The translations under genes were made by a program, and so were the position numbers. A DNA stretch of 64,000 bases from Salisapilia sapeloensis CBS 127946 (Eukaryota; Protista; Oomycota). Numbering within the stretch: the first letter of the stretch is position 1; each line of letters begins with the position of its first letter. Location of the stretch: contig JAADVB010000068.1 of the NCBI GenBank assembly GCA_023334545.1, forward strand, positions 13,468 through 77,467. Reading direction: 5' to 3'. Of this stretch, positions 55,172 through 63,900 are shown piece after piece. The notes under the pieces were generated by a model. That model worked only from the letters and a program-made list of their open reading frames with translations. It ran no database searches and was not told the origin of the DNA.

Positions 55172-58100
55172 ATGGAAGCTGCTCGAGCTCGAGACGAATC
55201 CCCGACGCTCGACGATGGACAGGTGCCAGACATCAAGCGGCGTAAATTAGACACAGATCAAGACGCCAATGGACAGAGTGGACAGGCAGATGAAGCTACA
55301 TCCGAGGATGAGCTCCCAGGGCCGCACGAAGAGCCGCTGGACGTGACCAAGCTCGCTGTCCTATGTCCTTCCGTCCACTTCCGCCACGCATTCCCTGTCC
55401 TATCGGACCAACAGCGAGTGTACACACCAGCTATTAAAGACGCGCTAGGTGTCGAATGGCGCGTGATATGGTATCCACAAGGCCGGATGCTTGATGGGAA
55501 CCACGTGAGCGTCTTTGTCGAACGCGTGCCGCCCATCCAGACGGACGACCTCCCTCCTCGTTGCATCGACGTCGAAGTCAGACTACTCCACCGCAGTGAC
55601 GTTGTAGAGCGGAATCACCATCAGCTCTCAGGTCTGCATCCGCTCACGGCAGACGAGACGGAGATTGGCGTGAAAGACTTGTATCCGCGCGAAGCCTTGT
55701 TAGACTCTCGTAACGGATTCATCACACCTGAATGGAGAGTGCAGGTAGAAGTACTCATCCACTCCCTCGCTCTTGCTCCACCAGAAGAACTCCCGACCGA
55801 ACCTCTGCGTCCAGAAGTGGATGCGAGAGAAGAAACAGGGATGGTCGGATTGAAGAACCAAGGCGCTACTTGTTACCTCAATTCTCTCCTCCAGACACTC
55901 TTCCATCTACGAGCATTCCGACAAGTCGTGTACGAGACACCGACGGAGAAAGAGGACACGACGGACTCTGTCTCGCTCGCCCTCCAACGCGTCTTCTATC
56001 GTCTCCAGTCGCATCATAAAGCTGTGAGCACCAAGGAGCTCACGCGTTCCTTTGGCTGGAGTCAAATCGATTCGTTCATGCAGCATGACGTCCAAGAGCT
56101 CTATCGTATCCTCTGCGATCGACTGGAAGAGAAGATGAAGAACACACCTGTCGACGGTGCGATCAAGCGTCTTTTCGAAGGCAAAGTCCGGAGTTTCGTC
56201 GAATGCGTCGACGTCGACTTCCGATCGACGCGAGACGAATCGTTCTACGATTTACAACTCGATGTCAAGGGCTGTAAAGACTTGTACGAGTCGTTTAAAA
56301 AGTATGTCGAAGTCGAGATGTTGGATGGTGATAATCAGTACGAAGCGGAAGGATATGGGAAACAAGATGCTAGGAAAGGCGTTCGCTTTCGACACTTTCC
56401 ACCTGTCCTAAGTCTTCAACTCAAACGCTTTGAATATGACCCAATGCGCGATGGGATGGTCAAGATCCACGACCGATTCACGTTCCCAAAGACGCTCGTA
56501 CTAGATCCATTCGTAGATGACGAGAGAGAGAGTAGTACTAGTGATAATCATGTCTATCATCTACATAGCGTACTTGTGCACAGTGGAGACGTCCATGGAG
56601 GACACTACTATGCTTACATCCGTACAGACCGACAGCTCCAGGAGACGTCGGACTGGTTTAAATTCGACGACGAACAGATCTCGAGAGCAGACGACTTGAC
56701 GGCGTTGGAAGGCAGTTTCGGTACGAACCAAGGCGACCAATCCAGCACTTCGACGCCTCTCTACTCGTCCATGCTCTGTTCTCCCGACAGTACGTCTGGT
56801 GTGAATGGAGACAACGGTCTCGATCTGCATCCTTCTACGTCTCCTGCAGAAGATGTAGGAGACGAAAGCCACACGGATCAGTCTATGCATGACACGAATA
56901 ACCTCCTGCTCCCACTTACACGTAGCTACGCGAGTGCCTACATGCTCGTATACGTTCGAGATGGTTTGAATGACATCTCAAGCATTCGAGAGCAGGTGGA
57001 AAAGAAGGAACAAGTAGATGTCCCACCAACGCTAGTCAATCGTTTCTTAGAAGAGGAAAAGGTGCATGCGGAACGCAAACGTCTGCAACAACTGGAGCAT
57101 TTGTTTTTGAACTTGAGAATCGCGACGGATGATAGTGTCGGACACTTGAAACGGATCACCAAGAGCATGGATTTCTCATCGTTTAATGCGACGAATACGC
57201 TCAAGCTTCGATTGCAACGTACGAATCCGATTCGAGCAGTCTACCTGCGAGTGTACTTGGCAACTGGAGTCCCAGTGCGTCGACAACGGATCTGGCGAGT
57301 GATCACGAGAGAGAACCGGACGCATCGACCGGATACGATGCTCGATCGAGAGGTACTAGACTACAGACTCGAAGGACTCGTGGATGAAGATGCTTCGGCC
57401 AAGAGTCCCGTCCGACTCTTTTTGCAGATTCTGCCTGATGCAGACACACGTTCGATCTATCGCTATTCTCTTGCGGACTTTACACCTCCTACTCAACCGG
57501 ATGTCGAGGGAAAGAGTGAGCAAGAAGCAGAGCAAGAACTATTGAAGAGTGTCGAGGAGATCGAGGACGAACCAACGTCCATCGGCGCGAATGACATCCT
57601 ACTCTTCGTCAAGTTTTATGATCTAGAGAAACGAGTAGGAGAGAGACTAGTGTACGTAGGAAACCTTGTCTTTGATAATCGACATACTGGGGCCCAGTTG
57701 GACGAGTATCTGCATGAAGCACTCGAGATACCTTCGTCCAAGGAGCTCGTGCTGTACGAAGAGATACAGCCGTCCAGCGTCGCGCCCATTCAACTCGACA
57801 CGACGCTCGAACAGTCCGAGATGCAGACTGGAGACATCGTGTGCTACCAATACGCTTGCACTCGTAAAGACGAAGCGTATCCGGACGTCCCGTCCTACTT
57901 TTCCTATCTTCTAGATAAAGTCGACGTCGTCTTCTACCAACTCGGAAGCACATCGTCGCTCACGCTTTCGCTGCTCTATAGCTACACGTACGACGAGATC
58001 ATTCACGCTCTTGCTTCATCTCTCGAACTAGATGACAGTCAGAAGATGCACTTGCGTCTGTATCAACACTCGCCACTGCATAATATGCCCAAGAAGTCTC

Positions 58101-59065
58101 CTTTACGACACTCGAGATACGCTGGTGACACACAGACCAAGCTTGAACATTTCTTAACTGAATACTCCGAACGATCGCACGTGATGCACTTTGAAATGCT
58201 CTCTGCTCCGATCACAGAGATCGAAGCGAAGAAACAAGTACGTGTAGCATGTAGTATCTACGACGACATCTTTGTCGACCCAACCGCTCCGACAGTCGCG
58301 AGACGAATGGAGTTTTATGTCCTACCGAGTGATACGATCAAAGACTTGATGCAGATGATTCGAAACCAATTGGACGTACCGGAAGACGTGGGCTTGAGGG
58401 TCTGTGAAACGAGAGATAATGGGACGGTCATCCATGCCGTGCTGGAGCTCGAGGAAGAGCTCGAGAGATATTGGGTCCATCATCATACAGGAAACTATGG
58501 TCTCTTTGTCGAAAGAGTGCCAGAGGAAGAGACGCAGACCAAGCATGCGAATCGAGTCGACCATCAAGGCACGGCGACTAGCCCAGTGGAGGTCGATGCG
58601 AGTGAAGAGGACGAACAGACGATGCTCATCCCAGTCGCACACTGTAGTCTGCTGGATGAAGAACGCAGTCTCGAGATGGTTCCGCATGGCGTCCCGTTCC
58701 TCGTCCACTGCCGAACGTTCGAGACGGTGGAACAAGTTCATAAACGCATGCAAAGAAGGTAGAGCCGAAGGTTTCTATATGTGTCTAGCAAGAGTATCTA
58801 ATGCATGTCTAGGATGGGCGTGAGTGATGCCGTATTTAACGAATGGAGACTGACGCTTTTGAAGAACAATCGAGCGTATCCGCTGCCGGATGTGCTCAAT
58901 GGGATGCACGCAGATCGGTACATGCAGCTGACGATGGAGAACCTGCAGAGCCTCATCCAGATGACGTTTGACGACCTCCGAGGCTTCGGCCTCGAACACT
59001 CGGAACCGCACCCTGTACCAAAGTATAACTCGAGACGGACCGACGGCGGCATCCGCATTCGTTGA
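55172..59065 (+). CDS. USP7: Ubiquitin carboxyl-terminal hydrolase 7-like (MATH, USP catalytic domain, UBL repeats, C-terminal activating tail); 2 exons
   Basis: GLKNQGATCYLNS, QHDVQE, HSGDVHGGHY, WFKFDD, AYMLVY. Last exon after an intron at about 58760-58811 ends FGLEHS...RR..GIRIR*. Confidence 0.93.
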
Positions 59066-59166
59066 ATACAAACACTCTCCATCCGTCCTTTTACAAAACG
59101 TGCCTATGAACGAGTACTCGTTGCTTTCTAGATGGTAAATAGGCAAAATTGGTATTCCTTCTCCTT

Positions 59167-61644
59167 TTACTCGTACAAGGATGCAAGCAGACGATGATGC
59201 TTGCTGTCCACCATCTCGCGTCGGACACGGCCACTCGTCGGATCGATCTCTCCTGACTCGACCGAAAAGGCTTCGGTCATGACAATCCACTTGCATACAC
59301 GAACGCCAGACACGCGTGCTCGATCTGGAAGGTCGTCGAGTACTCGATCGAAGTGGACGGCCCAGTACTGACACCTCGCGACTTCATCCACGGTCGTCGC
59401 TTGGCTACCGACGGAATGACCGACGTCCATCGCTTCTTCACTCAACTTCTTACCTACTCGCCCAGGAACATTTCCATTCGCATGCAAGTGCGGCTGACTA
59501 TTCGCACGTCCTCTCGCGACTTGTGTCTTGAGAAACAAGAGCACACAGAGGTATGGTCGACCGTCGCCCACAAGCACCGCACGATCGATCTCTGGTTCCT
59601 GCTGCAACGCATTCTCAAACGGCTGCACAGGTGCCCAGTCGCCTGTCGACAGCACGATAAACCGCGGCGGCGGCGACACATTGAGAAAGTCTGCCGGCGT
59701 CAAGTGTCCTCTCTGGGAGATATGCAGCCATCCATGATGCGCCTGCTGCGGCACGAAGCTCCCGTCGCGAATGTAACCTAGACAGACGTTCCGACCACGC
59801 ACGAGCACCTCTTGCGTTTCTTCATCGCACTTGACCTGCGTGCCTTGCAGCGGCATGCCAGAGCTCCCAAACTCCCAGTTATGAGGATAGTTCACCGTTG
59901 CGAAGCCACTTGTGCTTGGGTTACCAAAGAGCTGGTAGATCGGTACATCAATCGTCTTAAAGAGCTTCTCTAGATCTAAGTCAAGTGGAGAGAGGACCGA
60001 GTAGCAGGCATGACAACTTTCCAGTCCCAGTCGCTTCTTGAGTCCGTTTAACACGAGCCCTTTGGCGAGCATGTAGCCGAGACTCCGATGGCCTCCGCTC
60101 TGAGACCGCAGCTTTAACGAGTTGTTCGTCGCTCGGAGCTTGGCCCAACTGTAGAGAAAAGGATTGACCTCGCCTTTCATCCGATAGACCTGGTGACTTA
60201 GATGCGTCCATGTGTCTGGCGTCGCGAAGAAGACGGTCGGTCGACGCTCTGATAGGACCTGCAGCAGATTCTGTCGAGAGAACGTCGGAGCACACGTGAC
60301 GCCGAGACCACACATGATCGGAAGGTAGATCTCCAGCACCTGAGTGCCGACGTGATGCAGCTGCATGTACCCGACCATCCGATCGTTCCGAGTCAATGGA
60401 CCGAAGCAGACGTGGAGTGTGAAGGCTGTGAAGACGATATTGTCATGCGAGAGACAAGTACCGACGATACGACCGAGAGCGTCGTATCCAAAGTCCACGA
60501 CACAAGGGTCGCTTACGCGCAGACGACTCTGGAGGTCGTGCTCGATGGACACTTGCGGCACTCGCCCCATCCGCTCTGGATCCAAGAGGTCGCCGATCGT
60601 GTACACTAGGACATCGCCCGGTAGCTGTGCTTTGAAGCTTATCGGATCGACCTTGGAGCCAAGCAGCACGACCAACCTCAATCGAACGAGCTCTTCGTCC
60701 TCATCGCTTATATCGCTCTCTCCAGGAGATGGCGTCTCTTGCTGCTGAGCTAATTGCACCTGTAACGCCTCTATGATATTTGGATACGAGTCGTCTAGCA
60801 CCACGACACGAGCGTTCGCGTCAGGCCAAATGTGCTGCAGCAGCTCATCACTCGTCCAGCTCTGTCGGACGTGGCCGACGACGCCACCTAGAGCGATCAT
60901 AGCCATGTTGAGCATATACAAGTGTGGACAGGAACGACAGGTGAAGACTGCGCCGTCGCCAGTGTCAATGCCTAAGGAAACGAGAACGTTGGTGAGGTGC
61001 TGCGTCAGGCCATAGTACTCTGCCCAGGTATACGACACCTCTCCTCTATTCACAACTCTGCTACTATTCTCGTCTGTTAAGACGCGTTCTTCGCGTCCTG
61101 TGAGTGCTGTCGAGTCGCGATTCGCCTCCACGCTCTTGGTGAAAGCAGCCCAGAGACGCATCGGACGCACCATACTGTACTGATCAGCTCCGTCCGTCGA
61201 GACATTCGTCTGATCTGTCTGCCCTGTTAGCACCACTGGTTGCGTTGAACTCGTCTGGTTAAGCAGTCGACGCACTGGACGAGTGAAAGACGGCGGTGCT
61301 GGGTCAATACGGAACTTCCTGACGCGAGACGCCTGACCTTCTGACCCTGATTCACTCGGTCGCTGAGGTAACTCCACTGCTCGGAAGTGGTCCATATCGG
61401 AAGTAAGTCTCCTATGAGACGTCCCGGACGGTTTTTCCTCTGGAGCTATGGTACTGGATTCTGACTTTCCTACTCGTAGGCTGTCTCCACGAGGTTTGGT
61501 GTCTAAAGTGCATGACGAGCGTCTAGTATCGTCCTTGGTGTAATTGAATGGGCTCTGGGCATCTCGGTCGCTGAAGGAGTGGAGAGAATCAGTTATAGAA
61601 GTTTGTCGGCGTTCGAGCCGAGCGCTATCTCTGGTCGACTGCAT
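59167..61644 (-). CDS. Long-chain acyl-CoA synthetase (bubblegum-type AMP-binding fold) homolog with degenerate catalytic motifs, intronless
   Basis: 825-aa ORF from ATG 61644. Scaffold motifs TWAEYY, LSHDNI, DRMVGYMQLHH, RPTVF, GSSG, RGRNVCLGY, GWLH are present, but the ATP-binding motifs are altered (see findings). Confidence 0.82.
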   Translation of the reverse strand: MQSTRDSARLERRQTSITDSLHSFSDRDAQSPFNYTKDDTRRSSCTLDTKPRGDSLRVGKSESSTIAPEEKPSGTSHRRLTSDMDHFRAVELPQRPSESGSEGQASRVRKFRIDPAPPSFTRPVRRLLNQTSSTQPVVLTGQTDQTNVSTDGADQYSMVRPMRLWAAFTKSVEANRDSTALTGREERVLTDENSSRVVNRGEVSYTWAEYYGLTQHLTNVLVSLGIDTGDGAVFTCRSCPHLYMLNMAMIALGGVVGHVRQSWTSDELLQHIWPDANARVVVLDDSYPNIIEALQVQLAQQQETPSPGESDISDEDEELVRLRLVVLLGSKVDPISFKAQLPGDVLVYTIGDLLDPERMGRVPQVSIEHDLQSRLRVSDPCVVDFGYDALGRIVGTCLSHDNIVFTAFTLHVCFGPLTRNDRMVGYMQLHHVGTQVLEIYLPIMCGLGVTCAPTFSRQNLLQVLSERRPTVFFATPDTWTHLSHQVYRMKGEVNPFLYSWAKLRATNNSLKLRSQSGGHRSLGYMLAKGLVLNGLKKRLGLESCHACYSVLSPLDLDLEKLFKTIDVPIYQLFGNPSTSGFATVNYPHNWEFGSSGMPLQGTQVKCDEETQEVLVRGRNVCLGYIRDGSFVPQQAHHGWLHISQRGHLTPADFLNVSPPPRFIVLSTGDWAPVQPFENALQQEPEIDRAVLVGDGRPYLCVLLFLKTQVARGRANSQPHLHANGNVPGRVGKKLSEEAMDVGHSVGSQATTVDEVARCQYWAVHFDRVLDDLPDRARVSGVRVCKWIVMTEAFSVESGEIDPTSGRVRREMVDSKHHRLLASLYE

Positions 61645-62119
61645 GCAAATATGAAAACTGACATGGAGGGCGGGTGGTTGCGTGAAGGTTGCTCGACAAT
61701 TGACAAGCGTCTTATCCAACGAAGAGGAGACAAGTAGAGACAAGAGAGGTTCTGGAAAGAATCTTGCGTAGCGAAGGACACGACGAGACAGACGAGTGTA
61801 GCCACCGGACGTTTATAATTGGAAGAAATACATAGTAGATGCATTACGAGGCCAACAAGAGGACGAGGAGGCGAATTAGGTACGGTCACAAAGGTGGAAA
61901 TGATTATCATTTCTATCATGAGACATCTCGGAGAGATACACGCGGATGATAATGCACTATGGATGCACTTGCCAAGCAATCACTATGCAAGTAGAATACC
62001 CATGGTACTTGAAGTTCTCTTCATGATGATACCGTCGAAAGTAACTGGACAATCTACTGGGTTTTACTGTAGAAATGTCCGAAGAACAGTCGTCCGGATA
62101 AGATTATTCACTTAACCGA

Positions 62120-63900
62120 ATGGACACAATCCATCACTCGAAAGCTATGGAGCACCCAGAGCTCCTAGGAGTGGCGCTCGTGGTCGACGACTTGCACAAG
62201 GGATGTCACCTGGCCTTTCGATACCCTCCCCCACCATCACCCAGCTCCAAGTCCAAATTCCATCGTCTAAGTGCCGCTCTGACAGCCAAGTTACTACGTC
62301 CGAAGAATGCTCTTTGCAATCAAAGCTTTGAGCTAGCCATCGACAGCCTCCACTTTGTCAGTCACCCAGTCGTAGTCTCCCATCGTCCAACTGCATACGC
62401 AACGGTCGTTCGGAATGGAGCATACAGTTCCAGTCCAAGCTCTCGACCCGTCCACGGATCCACATCAGACGACACAGGGAAGGAGACGACCATGTTTAAC
62501 GTCATCTTCGCGCTAGCAGAGCCACCAGAATGGAGCTCCACTTGCTACACAGCCTATCGAACAGTCGCGGCACAGATATCCAATGCCTTGTTACACGAAG
62601 AGCTCCGATCTGGCTTTGTGTCGCACGAAGTCCGACAGCTTCTCCAGCTCCGAGAGGACCACAAGGACGAGTCGAGACGAGAGTGTAGCGTAAACGTAGC
62701 GGACAGGAGTTCAGGAGATAGTAATAATACAAGTAGGACGGAGAGGAAGGAAGGAGAGTCGAATAAATCTCTAGTCGAGGTCGATCCACGTACGTTTACA
62801 GACTGGGCACTCCAGTCTAGCACTCTCGCTAATGACCTCAAACGTATCTTTCATGGACTTCGAGACACTGGTGTCGTCCACGTCGTCATGAACCGGTGGG
62901 TGAAGCTGTCGCTGACTCTGACACAAGCGGTGGGTCCTGCCATCCACGACCTGCGACCATATCACACGCTTCTGCTCCTCCAGGAAGAAGAAAAGATCCT
63001 AGCACAGCTGCCTCCAGACCACTCTCAGCAGCTACGAGTGCTCATCGAAGCCACGAACCCACTTAAGAGCTTCCAGGAACTAGCGCTCGAAACGAGTCTG
63101 CCGATCCACCAGCTCTTCCAACTAGCTGCGCACCTGGTCTTCTGGGGTTTTGGTCGCATCGTCGATACCATCACGATGCACAATATTTATCAAGTCCATC
63201 CGAAAGCCCAGATCGGTCCCTCGTCCTCTGGTATCGCAGTTGCCTTCCGTATCAAGTTCCCCATGCGAGAACTAGGTGAGACCTTGGCAGTCTTCTCCCA
63301 AGCCAAGCGTCTCGGAGAACATATTAAGCCTCTATCTACTAATGCCAAGGAAGAGTACATCCACGTATTGGTAGGTGCATAGGCTCGTACAAGTATATAG
63401 GAAGCTAATGATGAAGATAGATATGGCTACTTCAGAACGAGCTCATCTTCCAGCTCCATCGGTACGTCTACTTTATGATCCCGTCCGAGAATGACGACGC
63501 TTCGGAGGAGGAAACCAACCAACGTCCATCCATGCCGTTCCTATCGACGTCTATGAGGAAGAGAGGACATAGCTGGAGCACAAGCAGCGGTCTGTCTCCG
63601 TCGCTACTGCCGATGGACGAAGAAGATGTGGAAATTAGCAGTAGCCTGTCGTCCCAGCAAGCGTCTCTAGTCCAGCCGAAAGGTCTTCCTGCACTTGCTT
63701 TCTCCACGTCCGAACGAGCATACCTGGAGAAGATTGCTACGAATACGCCGGTCTTTGCGCTTTTCAAACGCCTGTGTGTATACTTTCATGGACAGCATCA
63801 CATGGAAGAGATTATGTGGAGAGAGAACATTTCAAGAAGTGAGCTAAGGACGGTACTGAGTACATATAAAGAGAGTATCGTGTGCTGCATGCACGAGTGA
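62120..63900 (+). CDS. NPRL3: GATOR1 subunit NPRL3 (nitrogen permease regulator 3-like); 2 exons
   Basis: LAFRYP, LLRPKNALCNQSFELAIDSLHFVSHP, LLHEELRSGF, LRPYHTLLL, QLAAHLVFWG, -IWLLQNELIFQLHRYV, YFHGQHHMEEIMWRENISRSEL. Intron at about 63371-63420. Confidence 0.92.

What the first reader, a model, noticed from the sequence alone, without database searches (positions are those of the whole stretch)
59167..61644. Full-length acyl-CoA synthetase fold with every ATP/catalytic motif replaced: candidate pseudoenzyme
Seen: an intact 825-aa ORF that follows bubblegum-type long-chain acyl-CoA synthetases from end to end but differs at the catalytic motifs. The P-loop YTSGTTGxPKG reads DFGYDALGRIVG (about 60455-60495, directly before the retained LSHDNI). 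YGxSE reads FGNPS. The ribose-binding (S/T)GD reads ISQ. The hinge GRxK reads PPPR. The C-terminal catalytic Lys of PTxKxKR reads PTSGRVRR. Known: these motifs are needed for adenylation in ANL-superfamily enzymes. Inference: loss focused on the catalytic motifs without frameshifts or stops suggests a selected non-catalytic role such as lipid or CoA sensing, scaffolding, or regulating an active paralog. It also has an N-terminal extension of about 150 aa rich in S/R. Its divergent neighbour is the nutrient-signalling gene NPRL3, which may be coincidence.
Basis: partly seen in the sequence, partly recalled or inferred. Interest (0 to 1): 0.7.

Follow-up and report, generated by a model that had tools for sequence, protein, structure and literature searches.

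The report
Dead acyl-CoA synthetase paralogue of oomycetes
This water-mould gene encodes a full-length, transcribed and strongly conserved copy of a fatty-acid-activating enzyme that has lost the residues all such enzymes need to use ATP. It has orthologues in all the main oomycete groups sampled here, so it has very probably taken on a non-enzymatic (or at least non-ATP) role that I found no paper describing.

Summary
Window 59167-61644 (-) is an intact, intronless 825-aa ORF. Its transcript is seen as unspliced 2.7-kb contigs in runs that I infer to be RNA. Pfam AMP-binding and AMP-binding_C_3 both match, and the AlphaFold model (pLDDT 92.8) is a complete two-domain ANL fold.

All five residues reported invariant in 374 class I adenylate-forming enzymes are replaced in the window protein: S577, Q611, Q644, P659 and R806. 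The P-loop is also gone.

It is not a decaying pseudogene:
- An exhaustive profile search finds a monophyletic clade (SH-aLRT 100) with the same decay. Named members are Phytophthora, Plasmopara, Peronosclerospora, Albugo, Lagenidium, Pythium, Saprolegnia and Aphanomyces.
- The clade is nested among canonical ACSBG-like enzymes.
- dN/dS of the ANL domain among three close orthologues is 0.08-0.14, as low as the neighbouring USP7 gene.

Constraint has moved away from the catalytic motifs. It now falls on a helical insertion (residues 495-534), a C-terminal segment (735-774) and new clade-specific motifs. The disordered N-terminal extension carries a conserved RRxTSDxISF motif.

The NPRL3 adjacency is not conserved and looks coincidental. 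Database orthologues are auto-named as ligases, and I found no paper on them. Earlier scan notes cover other ACS genes in this genome, not this one.

The parts
59167..61644 (-). CDS of the ACSBG-derived pseudo-synthetase (825 aa plus stop), single exon
   Evidence: The RNA-derived contigs are colinear and identical over it.
59081..61862 (-). Approximate mRNA extent, unspliced. Contigs cover 59081-61791 in run X2 and 59146-61862 in run X3.
   Evidence: The same runs carry GT..AG splice joints in the neighbouring genes that the DNA run X5 lacks, so I take them to be RNA-derived.
61183..61644 (-). N-terminal extension, residues 1-154. It is S/R/T-rich, probably disordered and fast-evolving (dN/dS about 0.5 in the orthologues).
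61393..61413 (-). Conserved short linear motif RRLTSDM (residues 78-84; clade consensus RR[LV]TSDxISF). It has the form of a basophilic-kinase site.
   Evidence: T81 and S82 are invariant in 8 peronosporalean-type orthologues. The kinase reading is inference.
59773..61056 (-). ANL large (N-terminal) domain, residues 197-624
   Evidence: Pfam PF00501; AlphaFold model; Foldseek
60460..60492 (-). Relic of the A3 P-loop, FGYDALGRIVG (residues 385-395). The clade consensus is [FY]xYDxxGxxRG.
60043..60162 (-). Helical insertion, residues 495-534. This is the segment whose conservation rose most in the dead clade (pair identity 0.51/0.47 against 0.21/0.26 in active homologues). It holds the clade-specific residues Y498, R504, K511, L512 and L532; K490 lies just before it.
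59914..59928 (-). Relic of A5 (YGxSE), which reads FGNPS (residues 573-577). Invariant Glu is replaced by S577.
59812..59814 (-). Q611, at the position of the invariant A6 Gly (Gly384 in Thermus LACS numbering)
   Evidence: PMC6122825
59713..59721 (-). Relic of A7 (S/T)GD, which reads ISQ (residues 642-644). Invariant Asp is replaced by Q644.
59635..59676 (-). Relic of the A8 hinge (residues 657-670). SPPPRFIVLSTGDW replaces TGRxKELIITAGGEN. The invariant Arg is lost, and LSTGDW is a new motif specific to the clade.
59170..59658 (-). ANL small (C-terminal) domain, residues 663-825
   Evidence: Pfam PF23562; model
59323..59442 (-). C-terminal-domain segment, residues 735-774, with raised conservation in the dead clade (0.37-0.44 against 0.22-0.24)
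59218..59241 (-). Relic of A10, PTSGRVRR (residues 802-809). The catalytic Lys is replaced by R806; this position is not conserved across the clade (E, A, V, D, Q, R).
61593..61664 (-). Out-of-frame uORF of 23 codons that overlaps the main ATG
   Evidence: read from the sequence. It lies inside both transcript contigs. Its function was not tested.

Best explanation
The gene encodes a conserved pseudoenzyme. An ACSBG ('bubblegum')-type long-chain acyl-CoA synthetase was duplicated in an early oomycete. One copy lost the ATP-phosphate loop and the invariant Asp, Arg and Lys of adenylate-forming enzymes, and in this species also the invariant Glu and Gly. It kept the whole two-domain fold.

Shown here:
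- It is expressed.
- It is under purifying selection as strong as that on a housekeeping neighbour.
- It is found in both major oomycete branches.
- Selective constraint has moved from the catalytic motifs to a helical insertion (residues 495-534), a C-terminal-domain segment (735-774) and new clade-specific residues, including H258, R260, Y387, K490, R504, K511, C547, W590, L665 and D669.

Inferred:
- It no longer makes acyl-adenylate or acyl-CoA.
- It works by binding. The re-conserved surfaces would hold a partner protein (most simply an active ACSBG paralogue or another lipid-metabolic enzyme) or a lipid or acyl-CoA-type ligand in the remodelled cleft.
- The disordered N-terminal tail, with its conserved RRxTSDxISF site, provides phospho-dependent control in the peronosporalean lineages.
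For: Fold and family:
- Pfam AMP-binding plus AMP-binding_C_3.
- AlphaFold mean pLDDT 92.8, pTM 0.93.
- Foldseek gives at least 500 ANL structures; the 50 listed have E-values of 4.9e-28 to 6.2e-24.

Loss of catalytic residues:
- PMC6122825 reports Glu328, Gly384, Asp418, Arg433 and Lys524 invariant in 374 enzymes, and reports that P-loop mutations severely inhibit activity.
- The window protein has S577, Q611, Q644, P659 and R806.
- In 15 clade members the Asp is kept once, and the Arg and Lys never. In 66 canonical-type homologues the counts are 66/66, 64/66 and 64/66.

Not a pseudogene:
- The ORF is intact and the RNA contigs are unspliced and identical to the window.
- dN/dS of the ANL domain is 0.08-0.14, against 0.11-0.16 for USP7 in the same three genomes.
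- The window's terminal branch (0.61) is similar to Albugo (0.59) and Lagenidium (0.51).

Single ancient origin:
- The clade has SH-aLRT 100 on a long stem of 0.96 substitutions per site.
- It sits inside an ACSBG-like group with support 98.
- The named members are all oomycetes.

Shift of constraint, at equal overall divergence (mean pair identity 0.366 against 0.365):
- P-loop block: 0.29 against 0.58.
- Hinge: 0.42 against 0.65.
- A10: 0.34 against 0.50.
- Residues 495-534: 0.51/0.47 against 0.21/0.26.
- Residues 735-774: 0.37-0.44 against 0.22-0.24.
- 26 positions are conserved only in the dead clade.

N-terminal motif: conserved in 8 orthologues.

Precedent: the DIP2 FLD2 domain is a degenerate ANL module that sits beside an active one (PMC9342972).
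Against: - No biochemical data exist; absence of activity is inferred from sequence alone.
- Parts of the old cleft are still conserved: LSHDN, PLxH, AAP, the A5 Glu in 13 of 15 members, and the central P-loop Gly. That also fits a retained small-molecule site or a new chemistry.
- No partner was identified.
- The positions of the newly conserved residues on the 3-D model could not be examined, because coordinates are not exposed.
- The saprolegnian members, as modelled, lack the N-terminal extension, so the phospho-control idea cannot hold for the whole clade.
- The close-orthologue dN/dS comes from one genus-level group only. dS between the window and all orthologues is saturated (2.2-2.5).
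Confidence: 0.72

Rival explanations
1. It is a repurposed enzyme. The ANL scaffold has a new, ATP-independent chemistry, for example acting on acyl-CoA or another thioester or lipid, and uses the newly fixed polar residues in and near the old cleft.
For: Several clade-specific conserved residues are polar or potentially catalytic. They replace active-site-region residues rather than drifting: H258 and R260 for G and Y, Y387 in the P-loop, E438, C547, D669. The relic P-loop keeps a consensus of its own. LSHDN, PLxH and the A5 Glu are retained.
Against: I know of no ANL-fold enzyme that works without the adenylate step (own knowledge). The A10 position and the aromatic residue of A5 vary freely within the clade. 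The largest gains in constraint lie outside the classical motifs, at residues 495-534 and 735-774.
Confidence: 0.17
2. It is still a fatty-acid-adenylating acyl-CoA synthetase with very unusual motifs.
For: The fold is complete and both domains are present. Strong purifying selection fits an enzyme as well as a binder. One unnamed clade member (P0014) keeps the SGD motif.
Against: All five superfamily-invariant residues are replaced in the window protein. Asp, Arg and Lys are lost across the clade (Asp survives in one of 15 members), and the P-loop Thr/Ser/Lys are gone (PMC6122825). The catalytic-Lys position is not even conserved within the clade.
Confidence: 0.06
3. It is a decaying pseudogene, or a gene-model artefact.
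For: The window protein has lost two residues that most clade members keep: S577 for the A5 Glu, and V394 where 60% of the clade have Arg. An out-of-frame uORF overlaps the start codon.
Against: The 825-codon ORF is intact. The transcript is unspliced and identical to the window in three RNA-derived contig sets. The gene is conserved across all the main oomycete orders, with dN/dS about 0.1 in close orthologues. The terminal branch length is ordinary.
Confidence: 0.02

Closest known systems
ACSBG ('bubblegum') long-chain acyl-CoA synthetases (ANL superfamily)
   Same: Same two-domain fold and Pfam architecture (AMP-binding plus AMP-binding_C_3). It also shares the helical insertion and the LSHDN, PLxH, AAP and C-terminal LY signatures. 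Phylogenetically it is nested among ACSBG-like sequences.
   Different: It lacks the P-loop, the (S/T)GD Asp, the GRxKE hinge Arg and Lys, and the A10 Lys. In the window protein the A5 Glu and A6 Gly are also gone. It has its own conserved motifs ([FY]xYDxxGxxRG, DPxDF, LSTGDW) and, in peronosporalean lineages, a 150-250-aa disordered N-terminal extension.
FLD2 domain of DIP2 (the degenerate second fatty-acyl-AMP-ligase-like domain)
   Same: An ANL module whose adenylation motifs have degenerated but which is conserved and kept alongside an active ANL module. The authors conclude that it lost adenylation and diverged to an unidentified function (PMC9342972).
   Different: DIP2 FLD2 is fused in cis to an active FLD1, derives from FAAL-type enzymes and is widespread in eukaryotes. 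This protein is free-standing, derives from ACSBG, and its named members are all oomycetes.
HisZ-type regulatory paralogues of adenylate-forming enzymes (own knowledge, not tested here)
   Same: The concept only. A catalytically dead paralogue of an ATP-using synthetase is retained as a regulatory or binding subunit of another enzyme.
   Different: It is an unrelated fold (class II aminoacyl-tRNA synthetase), it is bacterial, and its partner is known. No partner is known here.

Membership tests
ANL superfamily (homology and fold) | Pfam AMP-binding (PF00501) match above the gathering score | tested here: met
   99.3 bits against a cut-off of 29.9, residues 197-624
ANL superfamily (homology and fold) | Two-domain fold: a large N-terminal domain plus a small C-terminal domain | tested here: met
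   AlphaFold pLDDT 92.8, pTM 0.93. Foldseek matches to CAR A-domain, MenE, Acs, 4CL and ttLC-FACS have probability 1.00. PF23562 scores 24.4 bits against a cut-off of 20.8.
ACSBG-type long-chain acyl-CoA synthetase subfamily (descent) | Groups with ACSBG-like sequences in a tree | tested here: met
   The dead clade is nested in a 31-row group (SH-aLRT 98) of sequences with canonical YTSGTTGxPK and GRxKELIITAGGEN motifs. One close canonical hit is named ACSBG by its source. This was a quick tree and no reference animal ACSBG was included.
Functional class I adenylate-forming enzyme | A3 P-loop (T/S)(S/G)G(T/S)(T/S)GxPK | tested here: not met
   FGYDALGRIV in the window protein. All 13 top representatives lack it.
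Functional class I adenylate-forming enzyme | Invariant Glu of A5 (Glu328 of Thermus LACS) | tested here: not met
   S577 in the window protein. E is kept in 13 of 15 clade members and in 66 of 66 canonical-type homologues.
Functional class I adenylate-forming enzyme | Invariant Gly of A6 (Gly384) | tested here: not met
   Q611 in the window protein. The clade has Q7, H2, G2, Y2, S1, K1; 53 of 66 canonical-type homologues have G.
Functional class I adenylate-forming enzyme | Invariant Asp of A7 (S/T)GD (Asp418) | tested here: not met
   Q644 in the window protein. The clade has Q in 11 of 15 and D in 1 of 15; canonical-type homologues have D in 66 of 66.
Functional class I adenylate-forming enzyme | Invariant Arg of the A8 hinge (Arg433) | tested here: not met
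   P659 in the window protein. No clade member has R at this position; 64 of 66 canonical-type homologues do.
Functional class I adenylate-forming enzyme | Catalytic Lys of A10 (Lys524) | tested here: not met
   R806 in the window protein. The clade has E, R, A, V, D, Q and others, never K; 64 of 66 canonical-type homologues have K.
Functional class I adenylate-forming enzyme | ATP-dependent acyl-adenylate or acyl-CoA formation | not testable with these tools
   Needs a biochemical assay.
Pseudoenzyme (operational definition) | Homologue of an enzyme that lacks catalytic residues, is expressed, and is under purifying selection | tested here: met
   Lack of activity itself was not measured.

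The most novel reading that the evidence does not exclude
Oomycetes carry a lineage-specific signalling or regulatory protein built on a dead ACSBG scaffold. The remodelled cleft would sense a fatty acid, acyl-CoA or related lipid. The re-conserved helical insertion and C-terminal segment would dock onto an active acyl-CoA synthetase or another lipid enzyme. The RRxTSD site in the N-terminal tail would put this under kinase control. That would be the first free-standing ANL-superfamily pseudoenzyme with a defined regulatory role, and an oomycete-specific node of lipid homeostasis.
Probability: 0.25. Interest if true: 0.7.

Novelty: new variant of a known kind. Interest (0 to 1): 0.55.

Why it matters
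Pseudoenzymes are well documented for kinases, phosphatases and proteases. My paper searches found no free-standing dead member of the adenylate-forming (ANL) superfamily; the nearest precedent is the degenerate second domain of DIP2.

This example is clean. It has a single origin and a long stem branch, followed by purifying selection across all the main oomycete orders, with a measurable move of constraint from the active site to new surfaces.

The named members are all oomycetes, a group that includes major crop and fish pathogens with unusual lipid biology. Databases name the orthologues 'long-chain-fatty-acid ligase', so metabolic reconstructions that count them as active enzymes are probably wrong.

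It also gives a testable system for how an acyl-CoA synthetase fold can be reused for binding or regulation.

Tried and rejected
- **Word-index protein search.** It found only three orthologues and two bacterial enzymes. The exhaustive profile search was needed to see the clade.
- **Literature.** These searches gave nothing on this protein family: 'pseudoenzyme' with 'acyl-CoA synthetase'; 'ANL superfamily' with 'pseudoenzyme' (0 papers); oomycete, LACS and bubblegum; Phytophthora and ACSBG.
- **Synteny as a functional clue.** The USP7/KDM5 side of the neighbourhood is shared with the three close orthologue loci only. It is absent in Plasmopara, Saprolegnia and the metagenomic member P0012. 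NPRL3 linkage is therefore treated as coincidence.
- **Conformational state of the model.** I considered reading the adenylate-forming or thioester-forming state from Foldseek rmsd values. The two 4CL states (5bst and 5bsr) score alike, so I dropped this.
- **dN/dS between the window and its orthologues.** It is 0.21-0.24 but dS is saturated at 2.2-2.5. Only the close-orthologue values are relied on.
- **Regex screen for motif loss among the 150 best hits.** It was too strict for the P-loop and flagged many truncated or slightly variant active enzymes. Only P0006-P0018 and the fragment P0099 lack the P-loop, hinge and A10 together and also align with the clade.
- **Organism.** Run and organism names were coded, so the species was not determined.
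Full report
**1. What is in the sequence**

The minus strand carries an ORF at 59167..61743. The first in-frame ATG is at 61644, which gives 825 aa.

Pfam finds AMP-binding (PF00501, 2.8e-28, residues 197-624) and AMP-binding_C_3 (PF23562, 4e-05, residues 663-710). Both are above their curated cut-offs. The best NCBIfam matches are long-chain fatty-acid-CoA ligase models (FadD11, PRK06187), but they score far below cut-off, for example 92 bits against 950. Sequence matches to solved ANL enzymes are weak, at 1.5e-07 or poorer. They align the stretch FGYDALGRIVG with the YTSGTTGRSKG loop of malonyl-CoA synthetase.

**2. Gene model and expression**

Four runs that hold the stretch were laid on 58001-63900. 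Runs X1-X3 are labelled only 'RNA?'. They carry three GT..AG joints: 58756/58811, 63369/63420 and, in X1 only, 62003/62072. The DNA run X5 lacks these joints, so I take X1-X3 to be transcript assemblies.

In X2 and X3 the gene is covered by separate unspliced contigs, 59081-61791 and 59146-61862. They have no differences from the window. The gene is therefore transcribed as an intronless mRNA of about 2.7 kb, and the unusual residues are not assembly errors. All three RNA runs come from one study.

**3. The catalytic motifs**

I aligned the protein to canonical homologues. PMC6122825 reports five residues invariant in 374 class I adenylate-forming enzymes: Glu328, Gly384, Asp418, Arg433 and Lys524 in Thermus LACS numbering. 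It also reports that P-loop mutations severely inhibit activity.

The table shows what the window protein has at these positions, together with counts.

| Thermus LACS residue | Window protein | 15 clade members | 66 canonical-type homologues |
|---|---|---|---|
| Glu328 (A5) | S577 | E in 13 | E in 66 |
| Gly384 (A6) | Q611 | G in 2 | G in 53 |
| Asp418 (A7) | Q644 | D in 1 | D in 66 |
| Arg433 (A8) | P659 | R in 0 | R in 64 |
| Lys524 (A10) | R806 | K in 0 | K in 64 |

The P-loop Thr/Ser/Pro/Lys are replaced as well.

**4. It is a family, not an accident**

The word-index search found three orthologues at 46-47% identity. They carry the same degenerate motifs and the same USP7/KDM5 neighbours.

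An exhaustive profile search of 1.84 billion representatives gave 13,246 hits. The 13 best (1119 to 269 bits) all have the degenerate motifs. From the 14th hit (262 bits) downwards, the aligned hits have canonical YTSGTTGxPK, SGD, GRxKELIITAGGEN and TxKxKR.

The named members of the degenerate set are all oomycetes:
- Plasmopara halstedii, labelled 'long-chain-fatty-acid-ligase'
- Phytophthora kernoviae and P. boehmeriae
- Peronosclerospora sorghi
- Albugo candida
- Lagenidium giganteum
- Pythium insidiosum
- Saprolegnia parasitica and S. diclina
- Aphanomyces euteiches

A maximum-likelihood tree of 62 rows (LG+C20, quick search) gave these results:
- The 15 degenerate sequences form one clade (SH-aLRT 100).
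- The clade sits on a long stem of 0.96 substitutions per site.
- It is nested in a 31-row group (support 98) of ACSBG-like canonical sequences.
- Inside the clade, Saprolegniales separate from the peronosporalean lineages, as expected for vertical descent.

The simplest history is one duplication of an ACSBG-type enzyme before the crown-oomycete split, then rapid change, then stasis.

**5. Selection**

Nei-Gojobori estimates among the three close orthologues (dS 0.34-0.44, unsaturated) give dN/dS of 0.155-0.22 for the whole gene. Split by region:
- ANL domain: 0.08-0.14.
- N-terminal extension: about 0.5.
- Neighbouring USP7 in the same genomes: 0.11-0.16.

The lowest sliding-window values (0.03-0.08) lie between residues 391 and 600. 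The window's own terminal branch (0.61) is like those of Albugo (0.59) and Lagenidium (0.51). I see no sign of extra decay in this lineage, despite its additional loss of the A5 Glu.

**6. Where the constraint went**

I compared ten non-redundant clade members with 62 active homologues. The two sets happen to have the same mean pairwise identity, 0.366 and 0.365, so blocks can be compared directly.

| Region | Dead clade | Active homologues |
|---|---|---|
| P-loop block (375-394) | 0.29 | 0.58 |
| Hinge (655-674) | 0.42 | 0.65 |
| A10 (795-814) | 0.34 | 0.50 |
| Residues 495-514 | 0.51 | 0.21 |
| Residues 515-534 | 0.47 | 0.26 |
| Residues 735-774 | 0.37-0.44 | 0.22-0.24 |

Residues 535-594 are also more conserved in the clade (ratios 1.3-1.6).

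Thirty-two positions that are at least 85% conserved in active enzymes are changed in the clade. Twenty-six positions are at least 85% conserved only in the clade, among them H258, R260, Y387, E438, T475, T478, K490, Y498, R504, K511, C547, Q571, W590, L665, D669 and R688.

The relic motifs have consensus sequences of their own: [FY]xYDxxGxxRG, DPxDF and LSTGDW. This is the pattern of neofunctionalisation, not of drift.

**7. Structure**

An AlphaFold2 model of residues 155-825, built from an 81-sequence alignment, has mean pLDDT 92.8 and pTM 0.93. Only residues 713-723 fall below pLDDT 50.

Foldseek against the PDB returns at least 500 ANL structures. The top ones are CAR A-domains, MenE, Acs, 4CL, ttLC-FACS and luciferase, at 12-15% identity. 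The three long helices at residues 476-539 are the insertion that shows the raised conservation. I could not inspect coordinates, so the spatial relation of the newly conserved residues remains open.

**8. The N-terminal extension**

Residues 1-154 are rich in S, R and T and evolve fast. They contain a short conserved motif, RR[LV]TSDxISF (window residues 78-87). It is present in the window protein, the three close orthologues, P0006, Plasmopara, P. boehmeriae and Lagenidium, and in weaker form in the Albugo-type sequence. T81 and S82 are invariant.

Reading this motif as a basophilic-kinase site is my inference. The Saprolegnia and Aphanomyces gene models start about 20 residues before the domain and lack the extension.

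**9. Interpretation**

Canonical adenylation is very unlikely. A decaying pseudogene is excluded. The best-supported reading is a non-adenylating ACSBG derivative kept for binding or regulation.

The nearest published precedent is the second FAAL-like domain of DIP2. Its adenylation motifs are degenerate, mutating them has no effect, and its authors say it has diverged to an unidentified function next to an active first domain (PMC9342972). By analogy, the oomycete protein may work together with an active acyl-CoA synthetase in trans. Earlier scan notes (unchecked) report several ACSBG paralogues in this genome, and Aphanomyces astaci has a near-canonical relative, P0021.

A new ATP-independent chemistry cannot be excluded, because several of the new conserved residues are polar and lie in former active-site segments.

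**10. Novelty**

The orthologues are in public databases under automatic names. None of the full-text searches found a description of a dead ACSBG or ANL paralogue in oomycetes, or of a free-standing ANL pseudoenzyme. I rate it a new variant of a known kind, of moderate interest. The evidence for 'conserved and catalytically dead' is strong, but the function is unknown.

**11. Limits**

- No biochemistry.
- A quick tree only.
- The dN/dS values come from one close group.
- The organism names of the runs were coded, so the species was not determined. Earlier notes call it an oomycete, which fits all named orthologues.

Noticed in passing
window 58756-58811: USP7 (ORF 55172-58762, +; Pfam UCH, USP7_ICP0_bdg and USP7_C2) has a 54-nt GT..AG intron near its 3' end. 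It is seen in the RNA contigs of X1-X3 and not in the DNA run. The genomic stop at 58762 is therefore intronic, and a short last exon follows. In the orthologue loci, the small unannotated 'genes' next to USP7 are probably this last exon.
   Followed up: partly
window 62003-62072 and 63369-63420: NPRL3 (62120-63382, +; Pfam NPR3, 8.5e-42) has a 50-nt intron at 63369/63420. In run X1 there is also a 68-nt GT..AG joint upstream of its ATG, which could be a 5'-UTR intron or an upstream exon. That would put its transcript start close to, or overlapping, the 5' end of the divergent pseudo-synthetase mRNA.
   Followed up: no
window 59081-59108: The 3' ends of the convergent USP7 and pseudo-synthetase transcripts overlap by about 28 nt (one X2 contig ends at 59108, another starts at 59081). 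In X1 the assembler fused three genes into one contig.
   Followed up: no
window 61593-61664 (-): An out-of-frame uORF of 23 codons starts 20 nt upstream of the main ATG and overlaps it. Two further upstream ATGs (61844, 61833) lie only inside the longer X3 contig.
   Followed up: no
window 60685-60759 (-), residues 296-320: An acidic, Ser-rich insertion (ETPSPGESDISDEDEEL) is found only in the window protein and is missing from the orthologues aligned. Model confidence is somewhat lower there (pLDDT 76-81).
   Followed up: no
proteins P0076, P0119 and P0021 (hits): Other ACSBG-like lineages outside the dead clade show partial motif decay. P0076 has lost the P-loop, has hinge GNVGD and has Arg for the A10 Lys, but keeps TGD. 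P0119 has hinge ARKRD and Thr for the A10 Lys. Aphanomyces astaci P0021 has a near-canonical P-loop (YTSGTGGTPKG) but hinge SGPLHE without the invariant Arg, and it sits next to the dead clade with weak support (83). Motif loss in this subfamily may be recurrent.
   Followed up: partly
L004 8001-9962 (metagenome scaffold, protein P0012): An unnamed sub-clade (P0012, P0014, P0015) of the dead family comes from metagenomes and Logan assemblies. P0012 sits on a eukaryotic contig with FAP206, a diacylglycerol kinase and a kinesin. P0014 keeps the SGD motif. Their taxon is unknown, so the family might reach beyond the described oomycetes.
   Followed up: partly
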